From positions 1,158,852 to 1,222,851 of the forward strand of contig NW_004797435.1 of assembly GCF_000002075.1 (NCBI RefSeq): DNA of 64,000 bases, in the 5' to 3' direction. The DNA comes from Aplysia californica (lineage: Eukaryota). Shown here piece by piece: positions 22,668-58,537 of the stretch. Below the pieces are notes generated by a model that saw only the letters and a program-made list of their open reading frames with translations, did not search any database and was not told the DNA's origin. Both the position numbers and the translations under genes were made by a program. Each line of letters starts with the position of its first letter. Positions within the stretch are counted from its first letter, which is position 1.

Positions 22668-23513
22668 ATGGATGATTGCGATCTTGAAAAATTAACTGTG
22701 AAACCGGGAAGCCTTTCTCCGGCATTCAAGAAAAATGTTCTGGAATACAACGTAACAGTTCCAAGTAGTGTTGAGAAGATAACTTTTGACCCGCGCACCA
22801 GTGACACCGGAGCTTCATATTCTATATCTGTACGTTGACGGAATGCAGGATCAAATAATAAATTATTGTTATATATAATAACTGTTTATATTAACGCAGT
22901 GGCAGTTCACGGGGCCCGGCTACGTTCACGACGCCGTGAATGCAGTTTGCAGGCGCTGTTCAGGCTTCGTTCACGGCACTTAAGTTTTGTTTAGACGGAG
23001 CGTCCACTGCTGGTTTAAGTAAGTCGGTTTTAGTCAGTGACATATAATTAATATTTTGGCCAGCTTCACAAGTATTACATCCCATGAGATGAAGGAAAAC
23101 GAAGTGCCCTTGCCTTACAGAATTAAAGTTGGGATGGAAAATTGGATACGGCAGATCAACATGGGAAACATGGAGGTGAAAGATGGGAAACAAGGTGGGA
23201 TTCAGAAGATGGGACTGGTCATAAAATGTGTACAATAATGACTGTATTGCAGCGGGTCAGCCTAGGAACCGACGCAGAGAGAAAATGACGGGAATCATTC
23301 ATTCTTATTATAATAACAAACAACCTCTCTCTCTCTCTCTCTCTCTTTCTGTCTGTCTTTCTCTCCTCTGTCTCTTTCCTTCTCTCTTTCTCCCCCCCTT
23401 CTCTCTCTATTTTTCTCTGTCTCTGTCTGTCTGTCTCTCCCTCCCTCTTTCTCTTCCCCCACCCCCTTCTCTCTCACCCCCCCCCCCACCTTCTCTCTTT
23501 CTCCCTCTCTCTC

Positions 23514-23551
<38 letters not shown>

Positions 23552-37800: not shown

Positions 37801-38744
37801 TATCCGAATGTCTCTTCTTTTTGTGTGAAATGATACACTTCGACAGCGATAAATATTTGGCTGCCCAGCCTGGAAATGAAGCTTGGACTGTCAACATTTT
37901 CCTAATCACGTACAATACATAACAAGTATACCATAAGTATAGGACTACCTAATCACGCAGCTTGTCACAGATACAACACGGATGCGAAGGAAGCCTCCTG
38001 TTGCATCTTTTATGAGACAGTAAAAGATTATAATACTAAAGCTCAAGAAGTGTGTTAGTAGTCTCCAATCATAAAACCATCTACCCATCCAAAGGAACTT
38101 TTGTAGTGATCTCTCCCTTCTGACTGAATTAGAAATTAGATCCAGACTTTTTTGCACATTTTAGACTGAAATCTGTTTTTCACAAATTTCTGTGTTTGTC
38201 CGCAGACATGTCAGAAATTGGTGAAGATCCAGCCGTGTGTCAGTTACGCTTTGTTCCTGCTCGGGTCCTCACAGTTTGCTCTCTATGAGAACACACCGGA
38301 TGACAAAGAAGGTAGTCAGATGCTCAAAGATGCCCGAGCATCATATGAGGCAAGTATTGGACTTGAAGGGAAGACAAGTGATGGAGACCCCCCACAGGCA
38401 ATCTCTGGTATGATTATTTGTACATGTGAACATATGTATGTGGCTCTGAAGAGAAAACCTGTTTGAAGGTACAGAAGGTTTTTGAGATATCACTGAAGAT
38501 TTAGAACTTGATTTTTATCAAAAATCAACTTGTCAGTGCAAAACTCCATCATGCATCACTTTTCAAATTGACGTATGGCAGAGTCTTACACTAAACAATC
38601 AAAATGAAGTTTTATGAAATATGGAAAGATAAGCCATTTGCAAGTCATTAGTGAAAAGAATTTTTTTCAAAGACTGTTGTAAATATTTGTTTGTTCACGT
38701 AGAGGATAGTAACTTTTATGCAATAGCTGACAATACCAAATGAA

Positions 38745-38822
<78 letters not shown>

Positions 38823-41800
38823 TTGTGTGTTAGTATGTGTATATATATATGCANNNNNNNNNNNNNNNNNNNNNNNNNNNNNNNNNNNNNNNNNNNNNNN
38901 NNNNNNNNNNNNNNNNNNNNNNNNNNNNNNNNNNNNNNNNNNNNNNNNNNNNNNNNNNNNNNNNNNNNNNNNNNNNNNNNNNNNNNNNNNNNNNNNNNNN
39001 NNNNNNNNNNNNNNNNATGTCTGAAACAAAACATTTTGTCTACTACTCTCTAGAACAAAAATGGTGGACGGAGCTGATCAAAAAAGAAGAAGAGGCCAAA
39101 AAAGCGGCTGCGGCCCCTCCCGTACCTACAGGGGGCACCACTGGGGCGGCTCCTGCTGCGACAAGCGCGCCTGGTGGCCGAGGGGCTCGTGGAGGGGCCA
39201 CTGCTGCTAGAGGAACCCCGGCTCGTGGAGCAGCTGCAGGGAGGGGTCGTGGAGTGCAGCCTGCTACGTCGAACACTGCAGTGAAGGGAGATAAGTCCAA
39301 ACATGTCTGTGTGCCGCAGAAATCAGGGGATAAGTCATGAGTTTTGTTTGTTCACATCTCGCTTTCTAGCTGCAGAATCTCGAAGTTCTCACTAGTGCTT
39401 ATTTCTTTTATTGTCACTTATTTTTTTGTGAGTATCACCCTTCTTTTCTTACACCATCTTTCTATTCTTTTGTATTTGTACACAACTGAGGGGGCGNNNN
39501 NNNNNNNNNNNNNNNNNNNNNNNNNNNNNNNNNNNNNNNNNNNNNNNNNNNNNNNNNNNNNNNNNNNNNNNNNNNNNNNNNNNNNNNNNNNNNNNNAGTG
39601 GGAAATGAGGAGGAAGCTGGGAAAGGGAGTTATTTTCCAGAATTTAAATAAAACACCATAACAATTGTGGAAAGATATTGTATACTGTCTGTGTACGTAT
39701 GAGTGGATAAGAGAAAAAAAATAAAAACTATGTTTGCCATTTGAATCGAAACAGGTAGTCTTTCCTTCAGCTTGTTCCTGTGCAGTAACTATTTTCTGGA
39801 TGATACTTTTGCTTTACAAGAAAGGAGTATGCTCATGTGGGTAAAATCTTAAAGATCAATATTTGGTATTTGTAAAGTGGTAAACAAACAACAACTTAAG
39901 ATAGATATAAAGAAAGAATATAGTTATGTCAGTTAATTCTATTTCCATTCTTTATGTTTAGAATTACTTTTTTGTGTGTATGAAGAAAAATAAGGAAAAG
40001 ATAAGATTATAATGTTTTCAACACAAGGAAGTACACTCCCCATTTAACCTTTTTAATATTTGTGCATAGAGCTATATATAGCCTAGACCTCCAAAATGTC
40101 CTCATCTTTGATTCAACAGCTTTGTATCTTTGTATATGTCATGTTGATGAAGGTATTTGATGGCTGAAATAACTTTCTTAATGCCACAGTCTGAGCTGAG
40201 TAGGACAAGTTAATATGTAAAGCGTTTAATCTTTGTTTTTTTTTCTTTGTGCATTTTAGGTCTTTTCATTCTCTCTTTCGACTAATGTAGAAATTTTCAA
40301 TTTTTTCACAGTACAGTAGTCCCCGCCTAAGATCCCACTGTTTGTGATCCCGATTCACTTAAGATCCCGCTGTTTTAAGAAAACTGAATTTTTACTATAC
40401 AAAAGTCACCCCTAAGATCCTGCTCTGATTCACTCTGAAAGTCTACATTTGGCTAAGATCTCGCATTTCAGATCATAATTTACTGAACAAAAACCTCGGG
40501 CGGGCACAGCTGATCAACCAAGAGTAAAAAGTTGAGATCAATGAACTGCCCGTCCCATCAAAGATAAGCCACTCTTGTGAATGCGATCACATACACCGAT
40601 GAAGCGGTGCAATGTTTGCCCCAGACGGGATCACACAGAGGTGTGAACTGACTGACACGTTTGTTTTCTCCAAACATCGCACTCGCATCTGAGCTCTCCC
40701 CTAAACTTACATCACTTCGCTCCAGGCGGGGTCACATCGAACTGTGAACTCTTCCCTGACCATTGCAGCAGTTGTCACTACTCCTGAATTTGTGAGACAG
40801 ACTGAATTTTAATTGATGTGGTCATAATGTAGTGGTACGTAACGACAAAGGTGAGGGAACTTGGTTAGAGAAGGAAAAGTATAAATTTTCAACAGGTAAA
40901 GAGGAGGAGCAACTGGATAAGCATAGATATTGAGACACACAATAAGATAATAAGTGAAAATGGCATGCCTCATGCCACTATGCCTTATGATAGGTCATCA
41001 CTCTTTGCTCGCCATATATCATAAACCCACCCAGGGGGCACGTCAGTTCATTGTAGATTGGAGGGAGACCATTTTACCGATTATAAGCCTTAACATGGGT
41101 CACCATAGATTTTTCCTTGGGTTTGTCGGTTAAGATCCCGGTTCGCCTTAGATTCCGTATTTCCTTGCGTCTGAGCACTGGGATCTTAGGTGGAGACTAC
41201 TGTATTTTAAAAACAGATAAATTTTCTCTTTTTTTTTTCTAGATGTCTGTTGACAATGCCTTCAAAGTGTTAACATGAAGCTTTGTCCTAACAATTTCAG
41301 CCACATTTCATTACTGTTGTAGTGATTCCTGTTATTTCTAATCTGCTCTGCCATTACAATTATTATTAAGTCATCTGTGTATTCAAATGTAAAAAATGCA
41401 TAATTTCATATACCCTCTTTGGCACTTTTTAGAGATACTGGTGTATTTCTTTTAATGTAGCTATGGTGCTTATACATGTACTTGCTTTCATTCATTTCTC
41501 ATCTTTTTTGCTTTGATCCCATTGTTGTCAACAAACCCATTTGTTTTCCATCTTTACATGGGCGTAATATCAAAGGGGTTTTGAATAACTTTCCCCTCTC
41601 GAAGTTGAATAGACTTCATGATATGTTTAAAGTTCATGCACATGGTAAATAAAACAATTAATTACGTTATAATACTAAACAATAACAGTATAATAAGAAT
41701 GATAATAATAATTCAATAATAATGATTTAACAAAAACAATAATAATAATCATCATAGTTCTCGAACATTATAAATAGCGTATGTGCACTCTGTGGATGTT

Positions 41801-44800
41801 CAATGCCCTATACCGAATATCAACATAAAAGAAGCTTGATTGAAATTGATGGGATGATTAAAGAGAAAGTAGTAATACTCTCTCAACCATTCTTTACTGT
41901 AAAATATTAATGAGGGGAGAATTTGGGGCAGAAGTTGCCTCAGTGTATTAGTTTACAGTTCAGACACAACTAATAAAATTGAGTTTTTCAGTACTCTGCT
42001 TTGATGATTGATTACCATTAAAGAACATTATAATTCAGAAACTGAAATTTGCCCATTGTTTAATGTGTATATTTTTCTCTCGTTCCTGTCTTTACGTCCT
42101 GCAGCTCGAGGTGGAGCAGCTGCCAGAGGGGCACCAGCTGCCAGAGGCCCTGCCAGGGTAAGAATCTAGCTCTCAATCACTTTTTAGTGTTTATTTATGA
42201 TAAAGTTTTGTAAAACTTTAATGTCTGCTTTGAGGCAATTTAGATAATTTTTGGATAGGGCTGTTTCAACCCTTCCGGTCAGGGCCAATGCAGGCTGAAT
42301 AGAATGCAGCATATCTCAGTGATCTGACGGAGATACTTGATAAAATAACTTCTGTGTTGCAGTTTACTGATAAAGTTTATTATAAGCCTACTGATAAAGT
42401 TTACCATAGGAAAATATTTCATTGTATTTTCCACAATCTCTTGTTACACAGCTAAAGAAGTCTGAATAAGTCTTCATTGATTTAGGAAAGGACAAACTTA
42501 ACTTTGCTGCTTTAACAACTTTTGCATCTCTAATTAAAAAAGATAGAAAGTTCATTCAATCAGAGCATAGTTTCTTATCCAAATTGTAATGTGCTAATTG
42601 CATCTTATAGTCGCAGCTTTTCAAATCAGAACAAGTAATTTGTATGTAAAGAAATAGGTAGAAGTAATTTTGATCATGAATTGTTAATTTATAGATTCCA
42701 GAAAGTGAACGTAATGGTTCATATTTCAACCCTCTGGGCCTACAGCCTTATACTGGTAGATTTACATTGAGGTACATGTTTGGTGCACAGAAGAGTACAG
42801 GTAGCTTGGGTCCTTATAATTCGGGTTATTTTATTGGCTGAAAAAGAGAAATAGAGAAATACTGTGTACTTGTCACAGTCATGATGTAAAGAAAAAAGAA
42901 TTTAAAACTTTCTTTGTTTGTGGACAGGGAGGGAAAGCCCAACCTGCACCTGCACCTGCTCAGAAACAAGAACCACCAGCAGAAACGAAAGGTGAGCAAC
43001 TTAAGGGTATCAAATGACGCAAATGACGATGATATGTTAATACATGTCATGTAGAAAATTGGGGGTGATGGGGGGGGGGGAGGGGGGGGGGTAGAGGATC
43101 ATTTCTCAGCACATCATATAATAAATAATCACTACTGTAAAAACAAAAAAATATGGTGATGTAATTCTGGTTTGTGTTGTGCTTTGGGGAATAACATTCC
43201 TCTAACAGTAGATGTTAGACTGGATTTATAGAGGATTCAACATAGAAAAAGTTAGATGAGAGTTGAACTGTGGACTTTTCAAATCAGACTCTTGGATTTC
43301 TTTTTATTCTGCTCTTGGCCTCTCAGTTTTCCTGAACAAAGCAACAACCACCAAAACAACCACCAACAAGTACATAGCGAGAACCTGCATTCAACAAGAC
43401 ACTGAATCACAGTTAACTTTTTTGCTTGCCCTTGTCCAGCTCCTGAACCAGAGCCAAAGAAAGAAGAAGTCAAAGCAGCTCCAAAGAAGGTTGTGATCAC
43501 AAATCCCAAGTCGTACCAGGCAAGGTTGGGCTTGGCTCGGGTACTGAGGGCTGCCAATGAACCGAATGAAGCAAAAAAATATTATGCCGAGGTTATTGAC
43601 ATGGCCCCAGAGGTAAAATATACCTTGCAAGCTTTCCTCTTTTGTGTTATTTTGTCAATATTTTTCTTCTTGAATCTATTGTATACTAAAATCTAGTCGT
43701 TAAATTTTATTAATAACTGAAGTTTTCTAGGAGTTTAAATATCTTATTATTTCTTTTCTTTTCTGTTTTGCATCTCCTTGTGAAACTGCTGTTATATTGT
43801 GAGGCCTTTTCATGTCACTTTTGCTATTCTCTACTGTCATGATTCTGACAGATCAAATTGTAGCTTTTATTACACTGCCACTATATTGATTTTCTCACTT
43901 TTTATCCTTTGAAGAATTCTTGTACGAATCTTAAGGGGAGGGGCTGATGATAATTCCAGCGTGGTCTGCTTTTTTGTGCTCCTTTTAGTGTTTCAGTTGT
44001 CCTTAATCTGTCAATTACAGGAATTTATTTGTTGCGATACTAACTTACTGTCGGTAACAACACTATATCATCTTCGTTGATGGAAATTTTTTATTGTGTC
44101 GTATCTCATTTATTTATACCTTCATCCATTGACCTGGTTGTAGACTGATTCAAGGGGTGGTAAAATAAATATTTGATTTCACATTCTTGTTTCAATATAC
44201 AGGTGCATGATGCATACATCGAAAGTGCTGAAATGCTGAGCAAATCCAACCCCTTGGAAGCAGTTGATGTGTATTGCAAATTCCCCATCTCTGAAAATCT
44301 TACTTTTGATGATGGTTTCATATTCGGGGAGATTGTTCGCATCTTGATGAAAGAGCAAAAGTTTGATGATGAGCGACTTGCAACTAACCTAATAGCATAT
44401 GGAAAAGTGTATGGAGTTGGTAAGTGACTGAGAATATTTCTAAAATTTTGACTTAAACTTTTCTGAGTCAACAAAAAATTCAATGTCTGAGAATAGAATT
44501 CTTGAATTAGCAATACTTACGTTGTTCCTTCCTGTCGTCTATCATCTCAGGCTACCCAAAAATGAACTTTTTCTCAGCTGGCCGTATGATCAGGGTGGAA
44601 GTCAGGGGTCGAATTAATTTCACCCCTCTGACTACCCTGAAAAGTTTTCATACAAGGGCACAATTTGAGCACTTTCACAAGCAGCCGTGAAATTTCACAT
44701 TCACACCACCCTGACCATCTGTGACAGTACAGGGCTGCCATAGATGGGTTAACAGTTACCCAAACTACACTTTCTTTTAGCTTCGTATAGAGACATGGGT

Positions 44801-45313
44801 GGGTTTGCGAGGATTCTCGTTAACATTTATATGTTTGGAAAAATGACAATGATTAAGATATGAAAATTCACTTACTTTGGTCAAATGTCTATTTTTTAAT
44901 AATTATAGTGTGTGTTTAAGCTGTAATTGTGTAATTAATTTGTCAGGAGGGAACATCTTACCCAACTCATCTGAGCAATCTCCCAAAAAATGCGTCACTT
45001 TTTCTTCCCTGTGCATCTAACGCACATCCATCCATCCAGGACTCAATACTACGATTTTTAAAGATGTATTGTAAGAAATTTTATCTTTTCAGTGTGTTCA
45101 CTAGTTCTTTCAGTTGAAAGTGGCATTGCCTGGTCTTATTCTGTTTGTGTTTATCTTTTTTTTTAAATCACAGGCGTTCTCGAGCGCTACACAAAAATTC
45201 TGGAAGAGAAGATGAAGAATGATCTTCTCAAGAAAGTTTACGCTGGTGTTAATAACAAATCGGTGGATGACCCTGACATGCAAGCTTTCTTCAAGTTCAA
45301 ATTTTGGATTTAA
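22668..45313 (+). CDS. Uncharacterised ~1095-aa protein: 2 cadherin-like beta-sandwich repeats, U-box-like (zinc-less RING) module, TPR repeats and RGG-rich linker; 20 coding exons
   Basis: Exons: 22668-22829, 26470-26674, 27093-27259, 27743-28040, 29081-29154, 29457-29510, 30453-30567, 31252-31430, 32786-33010, 33619-33827, 35068-35208, 36079-36216, 37304-37529, 38206-38407, 39054-39290, 42096-42157, 42928-42991, 43440-43612, 44203-44419, 45174-45313. Total 3288 nt, open throughout. 18 introns are GT-AG and one is inferred AT-AC. Motifs: LSPAFKKNVLEYNVTV / VTAEDGTTKNY and LEPNFEPNQLLYY / VTSADGSNKKTY; YECPISL...HTYS...DPLSGESL; TPR-like YNFHVGRMLVIQGNYGDAVKRLEAAL and ARLGLARVL...EAKKYYAEVIDMAP. 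Confidence 0.9.
22897..24151. mobile_element. Non-autonomous DNA transposon with ~200-bp TIRs in intron 1
   Basis: 22897-23105 is inverted against 23920-24151 (e.g. TAGACGGAGCGTCCAC / GTGGACGCTCCGTCTA and CATCCCATGAGATGAAGGAAAAC / GTTTTCCTTCATCTCATGGGATG). CAGTGGC termini. Internal (CT)n/(CA)n at 23325-23635. Confidence 0.85.
25020..26396 (-). mobile_element. 'ATGTG...CACAT' DNA transposon, copy C (inverted, interrupted by insertions)
   Basis: 25020-25170 and 26100-26396 are reverse complements of the two ends of 14938-15369. About 0.9 kb of unrelated sequence lies between, including an hAT-like piece ending CTGGCTACGCCAGTG (~25346-25503). Confidence 0.7.
28807..28900. repeat. (TG)n/(TGCG)n microsatellite
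   Basis: Read directly. Similar tracts lie at 24871-24980, 33957-34017, 38748-38830 and 47860-47927. Confidence 0.9.
29980..30277. mobile_element. piggyBac-like MITE
   Basis: TIR CTCTTTAAACCC / GGGTTTAAAGAG flanked by CTAA and TCAA (degenerate TTAA). Internal direct repeat TCGGA(T/C)GCTGGGA. Confidence 0.55.
32047..32578. mobile_element. MITE with ~30-bp TIRs and internal TGACTTAGGCC repeats
   Basis: TCAAGCTGCTACCTTTTTGGCCTAAGTCA against TGACATAGGCCAAAAAGGTAGCAGCTTGA. Confidence 0.75.
34632..35044 (+). mobile_element. 'ATGTG...CACAT' DNA transposon, copy B
   Basis: ATGTGAGGCACCGTAGTGAAATCAGGCGC... aligns end to end with 14938-15369. Confidence 0.8.
39291..42095 (+). other. Putative U2-type AT-AC intron
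   Basis: 5' site GGAG|ATAAGT. The 3' site is a polypyrimidine tract TTTTTCTCTCGTTCCTGTCTTTAC|GT. The phase-1 join gives VKG-GPAARGG in frame. Confidence 0.65.
40314..41202. mobile_element. Tc1/mariner (pogo/Tigger-like) MITE
   Basis: TA|CAGTAGTCCCCGCCTAAGATCCCACTG ... CACTGGGATCTTAGGTGGAGACTACTG|TA. TA TSD and subterminal TAAGATCCC repeats. Confidence 0.85.
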
Positions 45314-55056: not shown

Positions 55057-55298
55057 GACTGGGGGTTGTTGTGTGATCTTGTCCTTCTTTCGTTGTAACG
55101 AAAAAAAACCCTTTGTAATAAACGGAATTCATTTTTCAATTATGATTGCAACAAAATGTTCTTGGTGTCATAATATTATTATATTGGTATTGCATGTATG
55201 TGCGTACATAATAGGTCTTTATTTCAGCCAGTCAAAATACCCAAGTCTTTGAGAGAGCTAATTCAAGTACTTTAATTGAATCAAACGTTGTTTATAGG

Positions 55299-58200
55299 CC
55301 AAGTAACCCTTGTGAAGAACAACATTGAAAGCAGGGAAGTCAGTATGGGTTGTTGGGAGTCTGAGAATCTTCACTTGCTCGCTGTGGAACTCACGGATCA
55401 GCCAGTACGGAATGTCATCAATGTTTATGCCTGTAATGGATCTGTAGATGAAAAGGAATGGGGTAAGTTAGAAAACATTCGACAAACACTCTCTGGTCAG
55501 ACTTTATTTTGTGGAGATTTCAACGCCCGAGGTATCCAGTGGGGTAATATCAAGGACAACGCACAGGGAGTTGATTTAGAAAATGCTCTAGACTCGTGTG
55601 ATCTAGCTATACTAAATGATGGGAGAATGACACGCATGGCACAGAGGAAAAATGATACAGACAGTGCAATAGACTTGGCTTTAGTTTCTGTACAGATGGC
55701 AGCTAAATGTAGATGGGACGTTTTGAGCAGTCACGGAAGCGACCATCTTCCATGCCGAGTCTATATCAGAAAGACTCTTGAGAAATGTGGCCCGAAGAGG
55801 AAGAGACCATTTAGATACACACTTTTGGAGACTGACCCTATCACCATTCTACGCAAGAACACAAAAGAAAAGAGCCAATGCATAAGAAAGGACATGACTA
55901 AACCCCCATGGTGGAATGAGGAAATACAGGAGCACTGGGTTATTAAAAGAAAAGCACTTAGAGCGGCTCAAAGGAATCGAATGAATCCAGAACTCCAGGA
56001 AGCTGCAAAAAAGGCATCAAAGACTTTTAAAGAAACAGCAGAGCAGGAGAAAAACAAGAAATGGGAAGACTTCTGCCAGAATATTACAGGTGACAGATCT
56101 CTACAAAAGTTTTGGAGGTTTCACAAGGCAATGAACAACAGTCAGTCAAGAACATGCCTTCCTGATTTTCAGACAGAGGACAGTACGTGGGTTAGATCGG
56201 AAGAGGAGAAAGGGCAGGCTCTTTTGAACAGATACCTGCGACAAACGAATCAGAACAATGAGAACGAAAGAATGAGCATTCTAAGGGACATAGAAGGAAG
56301 ATACTGGGAAGGAGAGGAAGAGTTAAAAGTCACATTGGAGGCTGTTCGAAATATACTTAAGACGGCACCTGACACAGCACCAGGCCCAGATGGGGTGCGT
56401 TATTCCCACATCAAGGATCTGGATGACCGCAACTTGGAGAGTCTCGCAAACATCCTGGATACTAGTTTGCATGACGGGTTGGTTCCACAGGATTGGCTGG
56501 ACAGTTATCTTACACCCCTACCAAAGCCCGGGAAGGACCCCACAAAAATTGAGTCCTACAGGATTATCACAATGCAAAACACGGTGGGGAAACTAATGGA
56601 AAAAATGGTGTCCAGATGGATGTCCAATTTCTTAGAGCGCAACAATCTGATACCTGTGGAACTTGGAAGCTACCGCCCTGGTAAGGACACCTGGAGGAAT
56701 GCGGCAATTTTGGCCTCCGACATATACGACGGTTTTGAGGAGGGAAAAGAGACACTAGTCGCCGCAATAGATCTAGAAGATGCTTATAACCGGGTGCCCT
56801 TTAGCTTGATCATGCGAACTATGATCAATATGAAAATCGACTCTGAAATGCCTTGTTAAATAGAAAGGTTTTCTTGCGCCTTGGCAGCTGGGCTTCTGAA
56901 CCTATTACCATAACCCCAGGACTGCCCCAGGGATCGGCCCTGTCACCAGTCTTGTTCAATACATACACCATCGGTCTTACAGCCAATCAGTTGGAGGGAC
57001 CTGGCCGTACGCTAAGCTTTGCAGATGATGTATTGGTATATAGGCAGGGGAGAGATCGGAAGCTGATTGCAAGGAGCATGCAGGAGGAATTGGATCGAAT
57101 TGGTGAATGGTGCGAACAGAACAATGGAAAACTTAATCCAGCGAAGGCAGGGGTACTGTGGACCAGTCTCAACAACAGGGCAGTCAAGCTATCATGCCTA
57201 CTGTCAATATACAAGGCACACAGTTGGAAAGGCAAGAGAAATTGAAGTACCTGGGCATTACCTTTGACCGCACCCTCTCGGCAAAAGACCATGTGACGAA
57301 TATTATCACCAGAGCAAGGAAAGGACTTGTTGCACTGAGAGTGATGGCTGCATCTATGCCCCAACGCGCCCTTATGATCATGCTTCAAGCGGTTGTACTG
57401 TCTGTAGTGGACTATGGCCTTGGTATGCTCACCCTATCCAAAACCCAGCTACATCGCCTCGAAGTCATTCAAAATGAAGGAATGAGAACTGTTCTGGGAT
57501 GCACCCATGACACAGCAGCATCAGCGATGAGATATCTGCTGGACCTGCCAACGTTAACCCACCGACACAAACTAGCACAAGTCAAGGCCTACCTTCGAGT
57601 AACAGCAGACGAACGTCACCCTCTACATCCGAAAATAGGAAACCAAGTGCGCCAAAGATTGAAAAGAGAATCTTCATGGATGGTGCAGGCGGAGCGAACT
57701 CTCGGTATGTGCTGTGAAATCGAGGACATAAAAAGAGGATGTGACTGGATGAGGCCGGAAAAAGACATGAGCAACTTCATGAAGGTGATAGCTACGCTAG
57801 GTCGAGAGTGTCGCGAGTGGCCAGCAAATGCAACTAATTCGGAAATCGAGGCCATTGTTGAGGAAAATTCAGTGAGGGGTGATGTTGTCGTCTTCACCGA
57901 CGGATCAGTGAGGCGTGGCCAGAAATCTGGGTGGGCGTTCAGTGCTCGAGTTGACGGGAAGATAATTAAAGAACAATCTGGAGCCTACGAGTGCACTATG
58001 TCGAGCATGGCAATGGAGGTCAAGGCAATAACACAGGCGCTGGAATGGATCAGCATGGAAGCGTATAAACATGCCCTGTTTGTCACAGACTCGATGAGCA
58101 CCCTAGAAAAAATGAGGAGTGGGTGGCTCTACAGTGACTGGAGAGCTTCCATTGCAAATAGCCACCTCCTAAGAATTACATGGGTGTTCTGCCCTGGTCA

Positions 58201-58537
58201 CGCCGGGGTGCACGGAAATGAGCGTGCTGATGAACTTGCCGGCAAAGCAACACCCAATGGGCGAATCATGCTCGACCCACCAATGGTGATCGCCAGATGC
58301 AAGGAGAGCCTTCTCAACCAAGAGGAGACAGATTCCCACACACTCAGCACAATAAAAGGAAAGTGTGTGCGGGGCACAGCGAAAAAAAGTTTGCTCCGAG
58401 GAGTGGTCAGGCGTGTCTCAAACCAGCCCCTCATGGAGACAATTAGCAGGAAGACCCTGATGTGGACGCTGGAAAGGAGAGATGAGCAGCTATGGACATG
58501 CGCCGCCTGCTATGATTCTAGCTCTGGATCCAAGTAA
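55299..58537 (+). mobile_element. Nearly intact, 5'-truncated non-LTR retrotransposon with APE endonuclease, RT and RNase H (I/Nimb/Ingi-type)
   Basis: EN motifs CGDFNA, SAIDL and HGSDH. RT motifs APGPDG, YRIIT, DLEDAYNRV, GLPQGSALSPVLF, FADD and KYLG. RNase H motifs FTDGS and GHAGVHGNERADELA. Two frameshifts (~56850, ~57190). CAAGTAA end. 12-bp TSD GTTGTTTATAGG at 55287-55298 and 58538-58549. Confidence 0.95.

What the first reader, a model, noticed from the sequence alone, without database searches (positions are those of the whole stretch)
22668..45313. Uncharacterised candidate E3 ligase: bacterial-type cadherin-like sandwiches, U-box-like module and TPRs in one animal protein
Seen: a 20-exon ORF of ~1095 aa with no signal peptide (starts MDDCDLEKL). 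Its N-terminal ~190 aa are two tandem repeats with the pattern L..L.V..G.L.P.F......Y...V...VTAEDG...Y. Known: that pattern is the cadherin-like beta-sandwich of bacterial secreted and surface proteins, and U-box plus TPR is the CHIP/STUB1 logic, here in reversed order. Inference: a cytosolic ubiquitin ligase or adaptor whose Ig-like sandwiches or TPRs recognise a substrate, possibly a glycan, a microbial surface or a ciliary protein. I do not recognise a characterised gene with this architecture.
Basis: partly seen in the sequence, partly recalled or inferred. Interest (0 to 1): 0.85.

Follow-up and report, generated by a model that had tools for sequence, protein, structure and literature searches.

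The report
Orphan animal gene: zinc-less TRAF-like RING
A real 20-exon sea-slug gene encodes a cytosolic protein of about 1,095 residues, conserved from sponges to frogs, absent from amniotes and never studied. It joins two bacterial-type beta-sandwiches to a TRAF6-like RING domain without zinc sites and a long TPR coil, so it is probably a ubiquitin ligase or ligase-like scaffold with an unknown target.

Summary
Window 22668-45313 (+) carries one 20-exon gene. All three assembly gaps lie in introns, and the frame closes across them.

An unnamed public protein (P0085, 1091 aa) matches every exon at 100%.

- **Residues 1-187:** two Pfam Cadherin-like (PF12733) beta-sandwiches. There is no signal peptide and no membrane segment.
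- **Residues 196-302:** a RING/U-box fold without zinc ligands. It is related by profile and by predicted structure to the RING plus first zinc finger of TRAF6.
- **Remainder:** a TPR-type solenoid interrupted by a disordered RG-rich stretch.

The gene is single-copy and orthologous from sponge and corals to fishes and amphibians. No amniote, arthropod or nematode member appeared, and every named record is "uncharacterized".

The only paper found (Anantharaman and Aravind 2010) lists the sea-urchin orthologue as a carrier of the sandwich domain.

The zinc sites decay in a lineage mosaic across the family.

Ligase activity is inferred, not shown. The E2-docking prediction could not be run.

The scan has nothing on other DNA.

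The parts
22668..22829 (+). Exon 1, aa 1-54: start codon and first half of Cadherin-like sandwich 1
   Evidence: Pfam PF12733 at 29.3 bits. Donor gtacgt.
26470..26674 (+). Exon 2, aa 55-122: end of sandwich 1 and start of sandwich 2
   Evidence: PF12733 at 30.7 bits.
27093..27259 (+). Exon 3, aa 123-178: body of Cadherin-like sandwich 2
   Evidence: PF12733 at 25.9 bits.
27743..28040 (+). Exon 4, aa 179-277: last strand of sandwich 2, then the zinc-less RING/U-box-like domain (aa 196-275)
   Evidence: AlphaFold pLDDT 88.7. All top structural matches are RING/U-box domains.
29081..29154 (+). Exon 5, aa 278-302: remnant of the TRAF-type zinc finger 1, with only the last Cys kept
29457..29510 (+). 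Exon 6, aa 303-320: linker
30453..30567 (+). Exon 7, aa 321-358: first helices of the solenoid. Donor gtgagt lies 24 bases before gap 1.
30592..30736 (.). Assembly gap 1, inside intron 7 (30568-31251)
   Evidence: Orthologues are continuous across this junction.
31252..31430 (+). Exon 8, aa 359-418: TPR-like helices
32786..33010 (+). Exon 9, aa 419-493: solenoid
33619..33827 (+). Exon 10, aa 494-562: the best TPR pair (aa 517-601 of the family profile)
35068..35208 (+). Exon 11, aa 563-609: solenoid
36079..36216 (+). Exon 12, aa 610-655: solenoid
37304..37529 (+). Exon 13, aa 656-731: solenoid
38206..38407 (+). Exon 14, aa 732-798: solenoid
   Evidence: An X19 transcript contig covers 38206-38405 and runs on into upstream exons.
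38854..39016 (.). Assembly gap 2, inside intron 14 (38408-39053), just after a (TG)n run
39054..39290 (+). Exon 15, aa 799-877: last solenoid helix and start of the RG-rich disordered stretch
   Evidence: An X19 contig covers 39053-39290 and stops exactly at 39290.
39291..42095 (+). Intron 15, AT-AC (ataagt ... ctttac), holding assembly gap 3 (39497-39596)
   Evidence: A weaker GT-AG pair (donor after 39308, acceptor before 42105) would also keep the frame.
42096..42157 (+). Exon 16: RG-rich stretch. The public model P0085 stops at 42145, 4 aa shorter.
42928..42991 (+). Exon 17: disordered Pro/Ala/Lys-rich stretch
43440..43612 (+). Exon 18, P0085 aa 916-973: end of the disordered stretch and start of the C-terminal TPR domain
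   Evidence: An X19 contig covers 43463-43614 and runs on downstream.
44203..44419 (+). Exon 19, P0085 aa 974-1045: C-terminal helical domain, one of the two best conserved parts
45174..45313 (+). Exon 20, P0085 aa 1046-1091, and the stop codon

Best explanation
**What it is.** This is the sea-slug orthologue of an unnamed, single-copy gene family found across animals.

**Shown here.** The protein has no signal peptide or membrane segment. In order, it carries:
- two Cadherin-like (PF12733) beta-sandwiches, aa 1-187;
- a RING/U-box fold with no complete zinc site, followed by the remnant of a TRAF-type zinc finger, aa 196-302;
- a TPR-type alpha-solenoid, aa 323-820;
- a disordered stretch of about 110 residues in which every Arg is followed by Gly;
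- a well conserved C-terminal TPR domain.

**Inferred.**
- It works as a modular RING/U-box-type ubiquitin ligase.
- The zinc-free TRAF6-like unit docks an E2 through its two most conserved loops (ECPI.L and DPL), as U-boxes do without metal.
- The sandwiches and/or the solenoid hold the substrate.

**Speculative.**
- The sandwiches bind a carbohydrate or a repetitive surface inside the cell.
- The RG stretch is a site for arginine methylation, RNA binding or Tudor-domain binding.
For: **Gene and architecture.**
- The exons equal P0085 at 100%.
- The gene tree of 55 orthologues, built without the RING columns, follows the animal phylogeny.
- The gene occurs at one locus in the genome.
- A 4,988-base Logan contig from a goby-like fish carries the whole orthologue as one uninterrupted frame.

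**Sandwiches.**
- Pfam scores are above cut-off.
- The AlphaFold model gives pLDDT about 90 over aa 1-187, all beta.
- Foldseek matches tandem cadherin and Ig repeats and a bacterial glycosidase.

**RING/U-box fold.**
- The exon-4 model has pLDDT 88.7.
- All 50 best VIA matches are RING, U-box or SP-RING domains: Ring1b Z 11.3, TRAF6 Z 10.3 over 82 residues at 2.4 A, CHIP Z 9.8.
- Foldseek gives the same picture.

**TRAF kinship.**
- The family profile matches TRAF6 RING plus finger 1 at E 1.6e-5 over profile positions 197-314.
- A Cys-rich family fragment matches only TRAF2 and TRAF5 among RING proteins of the PDB.
- Deuterostome and cnidarian orthologues keep the C-x-C-x-H-x-C finger.

**Constraint on the loops that bind E2 in RING and U-box domains.** E205, C206, P207, L210, D243 and P244 are kept in 87-95% of the 55 orthologues.

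**Transcription.** Runs from at least three studies hold about a fifth of the words of a 2.8-kb stretch, which fits its exon share of 0.27. X19 contigs end at exon borders.
Against: - There is no experimental data of any kind.
- No Pfam RING or U-box model reaches its cut-off. The best is zf-Nse, E 0.007 on exon 4.
- Both zinc sites are gone, so this could be a dead ligase domain kept as a binding module.
- The position after the last ligand equivalent (aa 247) is Gly. In many RING ligases that position holds a basic 'linchpin' residue that activates the E2-ubiquitin conjugate (my own knowledge of the family).
- Two polyA RNA libraries of this species show almost no reads on the gene.
- No ligand of any PF12733 domain was tested here.
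Confidence: 0.5

Rival explanations
1. Pseudo-ligase scaffold. The RING-like unit no longer recruits an E2. It serves as a folding or dimerisation module, as BMI1 or BARD1 does for an active RING partner, or as an adaptor surface. The protein is a TPR scaffold.
For: - Zinc site 2 is incomplete in all 55 orthologues, and site 1 is lost in most bilaterians.
- The best structural matches include the heterodimeric Ring1b/Bmi1/PCGF5 RINGs.
- There is no basic residue at the linchpin position.
- No Pfam RING or U-box match is above cut-off.
Against: - The two loops that contact E2 in RING and U-box domains are the best conserved parts of the module.
- True U-boxes are active without zinc.
- TRAF6 itself lacks a classical linchpin (my own knowledge).
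Confidence: 0.35
2. Secreted or surface glycan-binding protein, like the bacterial and CPED1 carriers of PF12733, exported by a non-classical route.
For: PF12733 is otherwise found in secreted and surface proteins and was proposed to bind carbohydrate (PMC2824669).
Against: - There is no signal peptide or membrane segment in five orthologues from sponge to amphibian.
- The N-terminus is conserved from the first Met.
- RING-type modules and TPR solenoids are intracellular domains.
Confidence: 0.04
3. Gene-model artefact: two or more unrelated genes joined across assembly gaps.
For: - Three gaps lie inside the span.
- One intron has non-standard AT-AC ends.
- RNA reads did not bridge exons 15-18.
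Against: - The same architecture and length (about 1,060-1,240 aa) occur in more than 150 independently annotated animals.
- The window is collinear with the scallop protein from residue 1 to 1094.
- All gaps are intronic and the phases match.
- A fish contig holds the whole frame.
Confidence: 0.02
4. A divergent member of a characterised family: CHIP/STUB1, a TRAF, or TTC3.
For: - There is weak profile similarity to TRAF6.
- A TPR region combined with a RING-like module recalls CHIP and TTC3.
Against: - There is no MATH/TRAF-C domain, and the order is the reverse of CHIP.
- No named TRAF, CHIP or TTC3 protein appears among homologues found with full-length queries.
- The family forms its own clean tree.
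Confidence: 0.03

Closest known systems
TRAF6 N-terminal unit (RING plus first TRAF-type zinc finger)
   Same: - It is the best sequence-level relative with a solved structure: profile E 1.6e-5 over RING plus finger 1.
- It is among the best structural matches, with one of the longest low-rmsd alignments: Z 10.3, 82 residues, 2.4 A.
- The opening ECPI.L motif is shared.
- Orthologues in corals, echinoderms, amphioxus and vertebrates keep the finger's C-C-H-C set.
   Different: - In the window's protein 6 of 8 RING ligand positions and 3 of 4 finger ligand positions are replaced.
- There is no coiled coil and no MATH/TRAF-C domain.
- The module sits between beta-sandwiches and a TPR solenoid.
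U-box ligases (CHIP/STUB1, UBE4, plant PUB-ARM proteins)
   Same: - It has a RING-like fold without zinc.
- It has CPIS-type and DP-type loops.
- Structural matches include CHIP Z 9.8, Ufd2 9.5, a rice U-box 9.4 and UBE4B 8.5.
- As in plant PUB-ARM proteins, the module is followed by a helical-repeat domain.
   Different: - There is no match to the Pfam U-box model.
- By descent it is a TRAF-type RING. Early-branching orthologues still have one full zinc site.
- CHIP has the opposite domain order and only three TPRs.
Cadherin-like beta-sandwich proteins (Pfam PF12733): bacterial surface proteins and animal CPED1/C7orf58
   Same: - The domain family is the same, scoring above the Pfam cut-off.
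- The sea-urchin orthologue LOC580673 is in the alignment with which Anantharaman and Aravind defined the domain in 2010 (PMC2824669).
   Different: - Those proteins are secreted or on the cell surface.
- This one has no export signal and is fused to intracellular modules.
- The 2010 paper and its supplement do not mention the RING-like module or the TPRs.
SP-RING domains (Siz/PIAS, Nse2)
   Same: - It is a RING variant that has given up one of the two zinc sites.
- The weak Pfam hit of exon 4 is to zf-Nse.
- Structural matches are Z 7.0-7.6.
   Different: - By my own knowledge SP-RINGs keep the second site.
- Early-branching members of this family keep the first site, and most members keep neither.
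IFT172 (TPR solenoid with a U-box-like domain)
   Same: It is a long TPR protein carrying a zinc-poor U-box-like module. Only the title and abstract of PMC13290226 were seen. The language-model neighbours of the C-terminal domain are TTC21B-type intraflagellar TPR proteins, which is a lead only.
   Different: - No sequence relation was found.
- In IFT172 the module is C-terminal and preceded by beta-propellers.
- This family is absent from amniotes, unlike core cilium genes.

Membership tests
Pfam Cadherin-like beta sandwich (PF12733) | Match to the family model above its gathering score | tested here: met
   Exons 1-3 score 29.3, 30.7 and 25.9 bits against a cut-off of 24.2. P0085 scores 99.3 bits in two stretches.
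Pfam Cadherin-like beta sandwich (PF12733) | Beta-sandwich fold | tested here: met
   The AlphaFold model is all beta with pLDDT about 90 over aa 1-187. Foldseek matches tandem cadherin and Ig repeats.
Pfam Cadherin-like beta sandwich (PF12733) | Usual setting: secreted or cell-surface protein | tested here: not met
   No hydrophobic N-terminus and no membrane segment. The domain is fused to RING-like and TPR modules.
U-box ubiquitin ligases | RING-like cross-brace fold without zinc ligands | tested here: met
   Fold. Ligand table: site 1 has 1 of 4 and site 2 has 1 of 4 in the window's protein.
U-box ubiquitin ligases | Match to the Pfam U-box model (PF04564) | tested here: not met
   No U-box hit at E up to 1 on exon 4 or up to 0.1 on P0085.
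U-box ubiquitin ligases | Conserved hydrophobic and Pro residues of the two E2-binding loops | tested here: met
   C206, P207, L210 and P244 are kept in 93-95% of orthologues. Position 208 is Ile in 55% and Val, Phe, Met or Leu in nearly all the rest. This is a sequence-level test only.
U-box ubiquitin ligases | E2-dependent ubiquitin transfer | not testable with these tools
TRAF family | Zinc-binding C3HC3D RING | tested here: not met
   Only C1 and H4 are kept in the window's protein.
TRAF family | TRAF-type zinc fingers after the RING | tested here: not met
   The window's protein keeps 1 of 4 ligands. Corals, echinoderms, amphioxus and vertebrates keep 4 of 4.
TRAF family | Sequence similarity of RING plus finger 1 | tested here: met
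   The family profile matches TRAF6 chains at E 1.6e-5 to 1e-3. P0043 matches TRAF2 at E 0.019. Both are weak.
TRAF family | C-terminal coiled coil and MATH/TRAF-C domain | tested here: not met
   No MATH hit in five orthologues. The C-terminal 790 residues are TPR-type helices plus a disordered stretch.
CHIP/STUB1 | N-terminal three-TPR clamp, then a C-terminal U-box | tested here: not met
   The order is reversed and the solenoid is about 650 residues long. No CHIP protein appears among the homologues.

The most novel reading that the evidence does not exclude
One orthologous animal gene records the conversion of a zinc-binding TRAF-type RING and finger into a metal-free U-box-like fold, several times independently.
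- Site 2 was already incomplete in the common ancestor.
- Site 1 is kept only in the sponge, the corals, an unnamed lineage with an intron-less gene, and the acorn worm.
- The finger is kept only in corals, echinoderms, amphioxus and vertebrates.

Throughout, the module stays an active E2-docking unit of a cytosolic ligase. The bacterial-type sandwiches of that ligase read a glycan or microbial surface inside the cell. That function was given up by amniotes and, on the named hits seen here, by ecdysozoans.
Probability: 0.25. Interest if true: 0.75.

Novelty: new variant of a known kind. Interest (0 to 1): 0.55.

Why it matters
**For E3 ligase biology.**
- The family offers a natural series of orthologues with one, or no, RING zinc site, and with or without the adjoining zinc finger.
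- That makes two questions directly testable: how a RING becomes a U-box, and whether activity survives each step.

**For cell biology.**
- This is a large, well conserved, single-copy protein present from sponges to frogs with no known role.
- It joins a bacterial-type sandwich, otherwise extracellular, to ligase-type and scaffold modules.
- Frog, fish, Ciona and cnidarian models all have it, so a knock-out is feasible.
- Its absence from amniotes explains why it was never studied.

**Limit.** If the module turns out to be inactive, the finding shrinks to an ordinary uncharacterised TPR scaffold.

Tried and rejected
**Joined model.**
Window sequence went in exon by exon, by reference.
- The full-length work used P0085, which a search tool returned.
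- The script compared junctions one at a time and stored no joined sequence.

**Steps that failed or added little.**
- **Complex prediction:** This gives no verdict.
- **Read laying:** the two raw polyA RNA runs gave 8 and 16 partly fitting reads, mostly on repeats. Exons 15 to 18, the AT-AC junction and gaps 2 and 3 were therefore not bridged by reads. Only X19 contigs helped.
- **Paper searches:** domain words gave nothing relevant. Twelve orthologue gene identifiers and the UniProt-style name found one paper.
- **Protein Atlas:** only generic long-TPR neighbours came up (SKI3/TTC37, APC3, TTC21B). These are leads, not evidence.
- **Cluster look-up of ten unnamed fragments:** gave no names, so their taxa stay unknown.

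**Readings rejected.**
- A classical U-box: no model match.
- A TRAF: no MATH domain.
- A CHIP relative.
- A gene fusion.
- A secreted protein.

Full report
**1. What is in the sequence**

On the + strand between 22668 and 45313 there are 20 exons. An unnamed public protein, P0085 (1091 aa), was returned by a homologue search and matches every exon at 100% identity.

A junction-by-junction comparison reproduces P0085 exactly from the window. It gives the exon table listed under "parts".

- Seventeen of the 19 introns have GT-AG ends.
- Intron 15 has AT-AC ends (ataagt ... ctttac).
- At intron 16, P0085 implies a GG donor at 42146. The window has an ordinary donor 12 bases further on (42157|gtaaga).

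The protein starts MDDCDLEKL. An in-frame stop lies just upstream, and all 55 aligned orthologues begin at the same Met.

Window sequence went in exon by exon, by reference, and full-length work used P0085.

**2. The gaps, tested first**

All three runs of N lie in introns:

| Gap | Intron | Position |
|---|---|---|
| 30592-30736 | 7 | 24 bases after the donor |
| 38854-39016 | 14 | 37 bases before the acceptor, just after a (TG)n run |
| 39497-39596 | 15 | 206 bases after the donor |

- Exon phases match across each gap.
- Across introns 7 and 14 the scallop protein and the 55-sequence alignment run on with no residue missing.
- Around intron 15 the protein is low-complexity and variable, so alignment cannot exclude a small exon hidden in gap 3.
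- I did not fill or look up any gap letters.

**3. RNA evidence**

- About a dozen runs, from at least three named studies, hold roughly a fifth of the sampled words of window 26400-29200. This fits its exon share of 0.27, whereas genome runs hold 0.64-0.79.
- Contigs of run X19 cover 38206-38405, 39053-39290 and 43463-43614 and continue into neighbouring exons.
- The contig over exon 15 stops exactly at 39290. That is expected if transcripts diverge at the AT donor.
- Two raw polyA libraries gave almost no reads. No read bridges exons 15 to 18.

**4. The organism**

- The genome has 927,310,431 bases in 4,332 contigs, and the gene occurs at one locus.
- The nearest relatives are heterobranch gastropods: Plakobranchus 72% and Lymnaea 69% identity.
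- From my own knowledge those assembly figures fit the California sea hare, Aplysia californica. No tool named the species.

**5. Domains**

- **Sandwiches.** Exons 1-3 each match Pfam Cadherin-like (PF12733) above its cut-off. P0085 scores E 1.7e-28 in two stretches.
- **Overall model.** An AlphaFold model of P0085 with the orthologue alignment has mean pLDDT 82.7 and pTM 0.76. It shows:
  - two beta-sandwiches (aa 1-187);
  - a small alpha/beta module (196-275);
  - a helical solenoid (323-820);
  - a disordered stretch (823-931);
  - a helical C-terminal domain (935-1091).
- **Whole-model Foldseek.** It finds long TPR proteins (CTR9, SKI3, IFT-A, OGT), tandem cadherin and Ig repeats, and a Bifidobacterium glycosidase.
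- **Export signals.** None are present.
- **TPR region.** The family profile matches consensus TPR proteins at E 7.5e-37 and the OGT TPR region at 1.8e-11.

**6. The U-box-like module**

- **Family search.** Exon 4 alone found 62 proteins among 1.84 billion representatives. In the full-length hits the match starts near residue 180.
- **Predicted fold.**
  - The AlphaFold model of exon 4 has pLDDT 88.7.
  - Its 50 best matches among 48,161 chains are all RING, U-box or SP-RING domains: Ring1b Z 11.3, TRAF6 Z 10.3 over 82 residues at 2.4 A, CHIP Z 9.8.
  - Foldseek agrees.
- **Sequence-level kinship.**
  - The family profile matches the RING plus first zinc finger of TRAF6 at E 1.6e-5.
  - A profile of exon 4 alone gives only weak RING and U-box hits.
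  - A Cys-rich family fragment matches only TRAF2 and TRAF5 among RING proteins.
  - No Pfam RING or U-box model reaches its cut-off.
- **Zinc ligands.** The window's protein keeps 2 of the 8 RING ligand positions and 1 of the 4 finger positions.
- **Conservation.** E205, C206, P207, L210, Y214, P216, P224, T237, K241, D243, P244, L250 and W254 are the best conserved residues of the module. They include the two loops that bind E2 in RING and U-box domains (my own knowledge of the fold).

**7. The family**

- **Range.** Full-length orthologues of 1,060-1,240 aa occur in:
  - a sponge and corals;
  - molluscs, annelids, nemerteans and a bryozoan;
  - echinoderms, an acorn worm, amphioxus and tunicates;
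  - cartilaginous and bony fishes, the coelacanth and all three amphibian orders.
- **Absences.**
  - A caecilian query returned 164 hits and no amniote among the 120 listed.
  - No arthropod or nematode was among the named hits.
- **Names.** Apart from a few that look mis-assigned, every named record says "uncharacterized" or only names the sandwich domain.
- **Orthology.** A tree built without the RING columns follows the animal phylogeny, including acorn worm with echinoderms at 99% support.
- **Transcript evidence.** A contig from a goby-like fish carries the whole frame uninterrupted.
- **A possible non-animal lineage.**
  - Three unnamed proteins (P0120-P0122) form their own lineage.
  - P0120 lies as an intron-less gene on a compact 1.18-Mb metagenome contig.
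  - The family may therefore be older than animals.

**8. Zinc decay**

| Feature | Kept complete in | Lost or incomplete in |
|---|---|---|
| RING site 2 | none of the 55 members | all 55 |
| RING site 1 | sponge, two corals, the unnamed lineage, acorn worm | all other members |
| First TRAF-type finger | corals, echinoderms, amphioxus, vertebrates | all other members |

- The acorn worm keeps site 1 while its sister group, the echinoderms, has lost it.
- Regaining four cysteines is unlikely. Site 1 was therefore probably lost at least three times. Plain parsimony needs only two changes.

**9. Other features**

- In aa 815-935 all nine Arg residues are followed by Gly.
- Eight to twelve RG pairs recur in nearly all invertebrate bilaterian orthologues, and fewer in vertebrates and non-bilaterians.
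- The first sandwich and the C-terminal domain are the most conserved parts of the protein.

**10. Literature**

The only paper found is Anantharaman and Aravind 2010 (PMC2824669).

- It names the sea-urchin orthologue LOC580673 as a metazoan carrier of the new cadherin-like domain.
- It aligns both of the urchin protein's repeats.
- It proposes carbohydrate binding and a bacterial origin for the domain.
- Neither its text nor its supplement mentions a RING or TPRs.

**11. Verdict**

- The architecture is real and ancient, and the gene is unstudied.
- The "U-box-like" module is better described as a TRAF-type RING and finger that has become metal-free.
- Ligase function is a reasonable inference (about 0.5), with a pseudo-ligase scaffold as the main rival (about 0.35).
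- The substrate, the ligand of the sandwiches and the biological role are unknown.
- The E2-docking prediction could not be run.

Noticed in passing
window 39291-42095 (intron 15): The intron has AT-AC ends (ataagt ... ctttac) and lacks the U12-type donor motif. The public model P0085 uses it. A weak GT-AG pair (donor after 39308, acceptor before 42105) would also keep the frame, adding three residues. Predicted proteins of three other heterobranchs read through the same GDKSKH stretch, while a fourth has the AT-AC-type junction. An X19 contig stops exactly at 39290.
   Followed up: partly
window 42146-42157: The public protein P0085 lacks four residues (GPAR) that the window encodes before the ordinary donor at 42157. 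The stretch is a short GCCAGAGG-type repeat, so this may be an allele, an assembly difference or a modelling slip.
   Followed up: partly
window 39054-43475 (aa about 815-935): A disordered Ala/Gly/Pro-rich stretch in which every Arg is followed by Gly (9 RG, 3 RGG). Invertebrate bilaterian orthologues keep 8-12 RG pairs. This composition is typical of arginine-methylation or RNA-binding regions.
   Followed up: partly
window 55276-58537 (+): Two long open frames of a non-LTR retrotransposon. The first has endonuclease plus reverse transcriptase (E 1e-18 and 1e-9). The second has RNase H (E 9e-14).
   Followed up: partly
window 23300-23640, 24830-24980, 28780-28930, 33930-34030, 38740-38853: Long dinucleotide microsatellites, (CT)n and (TG/CA)n, lie in the introns. 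The last one abuts assembly gap 2 and probably caused it.
   Followed up: no
L016:3001-6387 (ENA metagenome contig of 1.18 Mb): A family member (P0120) is encoded without introns. It lies 256 bases from an intron-less glutathione synthetase gene, which points to a compact eukaryotic genome, perhaps not an animal. Its RING site 1 is intact.
   Followed up: partly
L005:1480-1896 (-) = G000:C210: A UBE2D-type E2 gene of this genome has residues 9-147 in a single exon. The first eight residues must lie in a separate upstream exon.
   Followed up: no
L015:3836-4912 (-): The fish contig that carries the full-length orthologue also holds a WD40 gene on the other strand, 423 bases away. It is probably two convergent transcripts merged by the assembler.
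   Followed up: no
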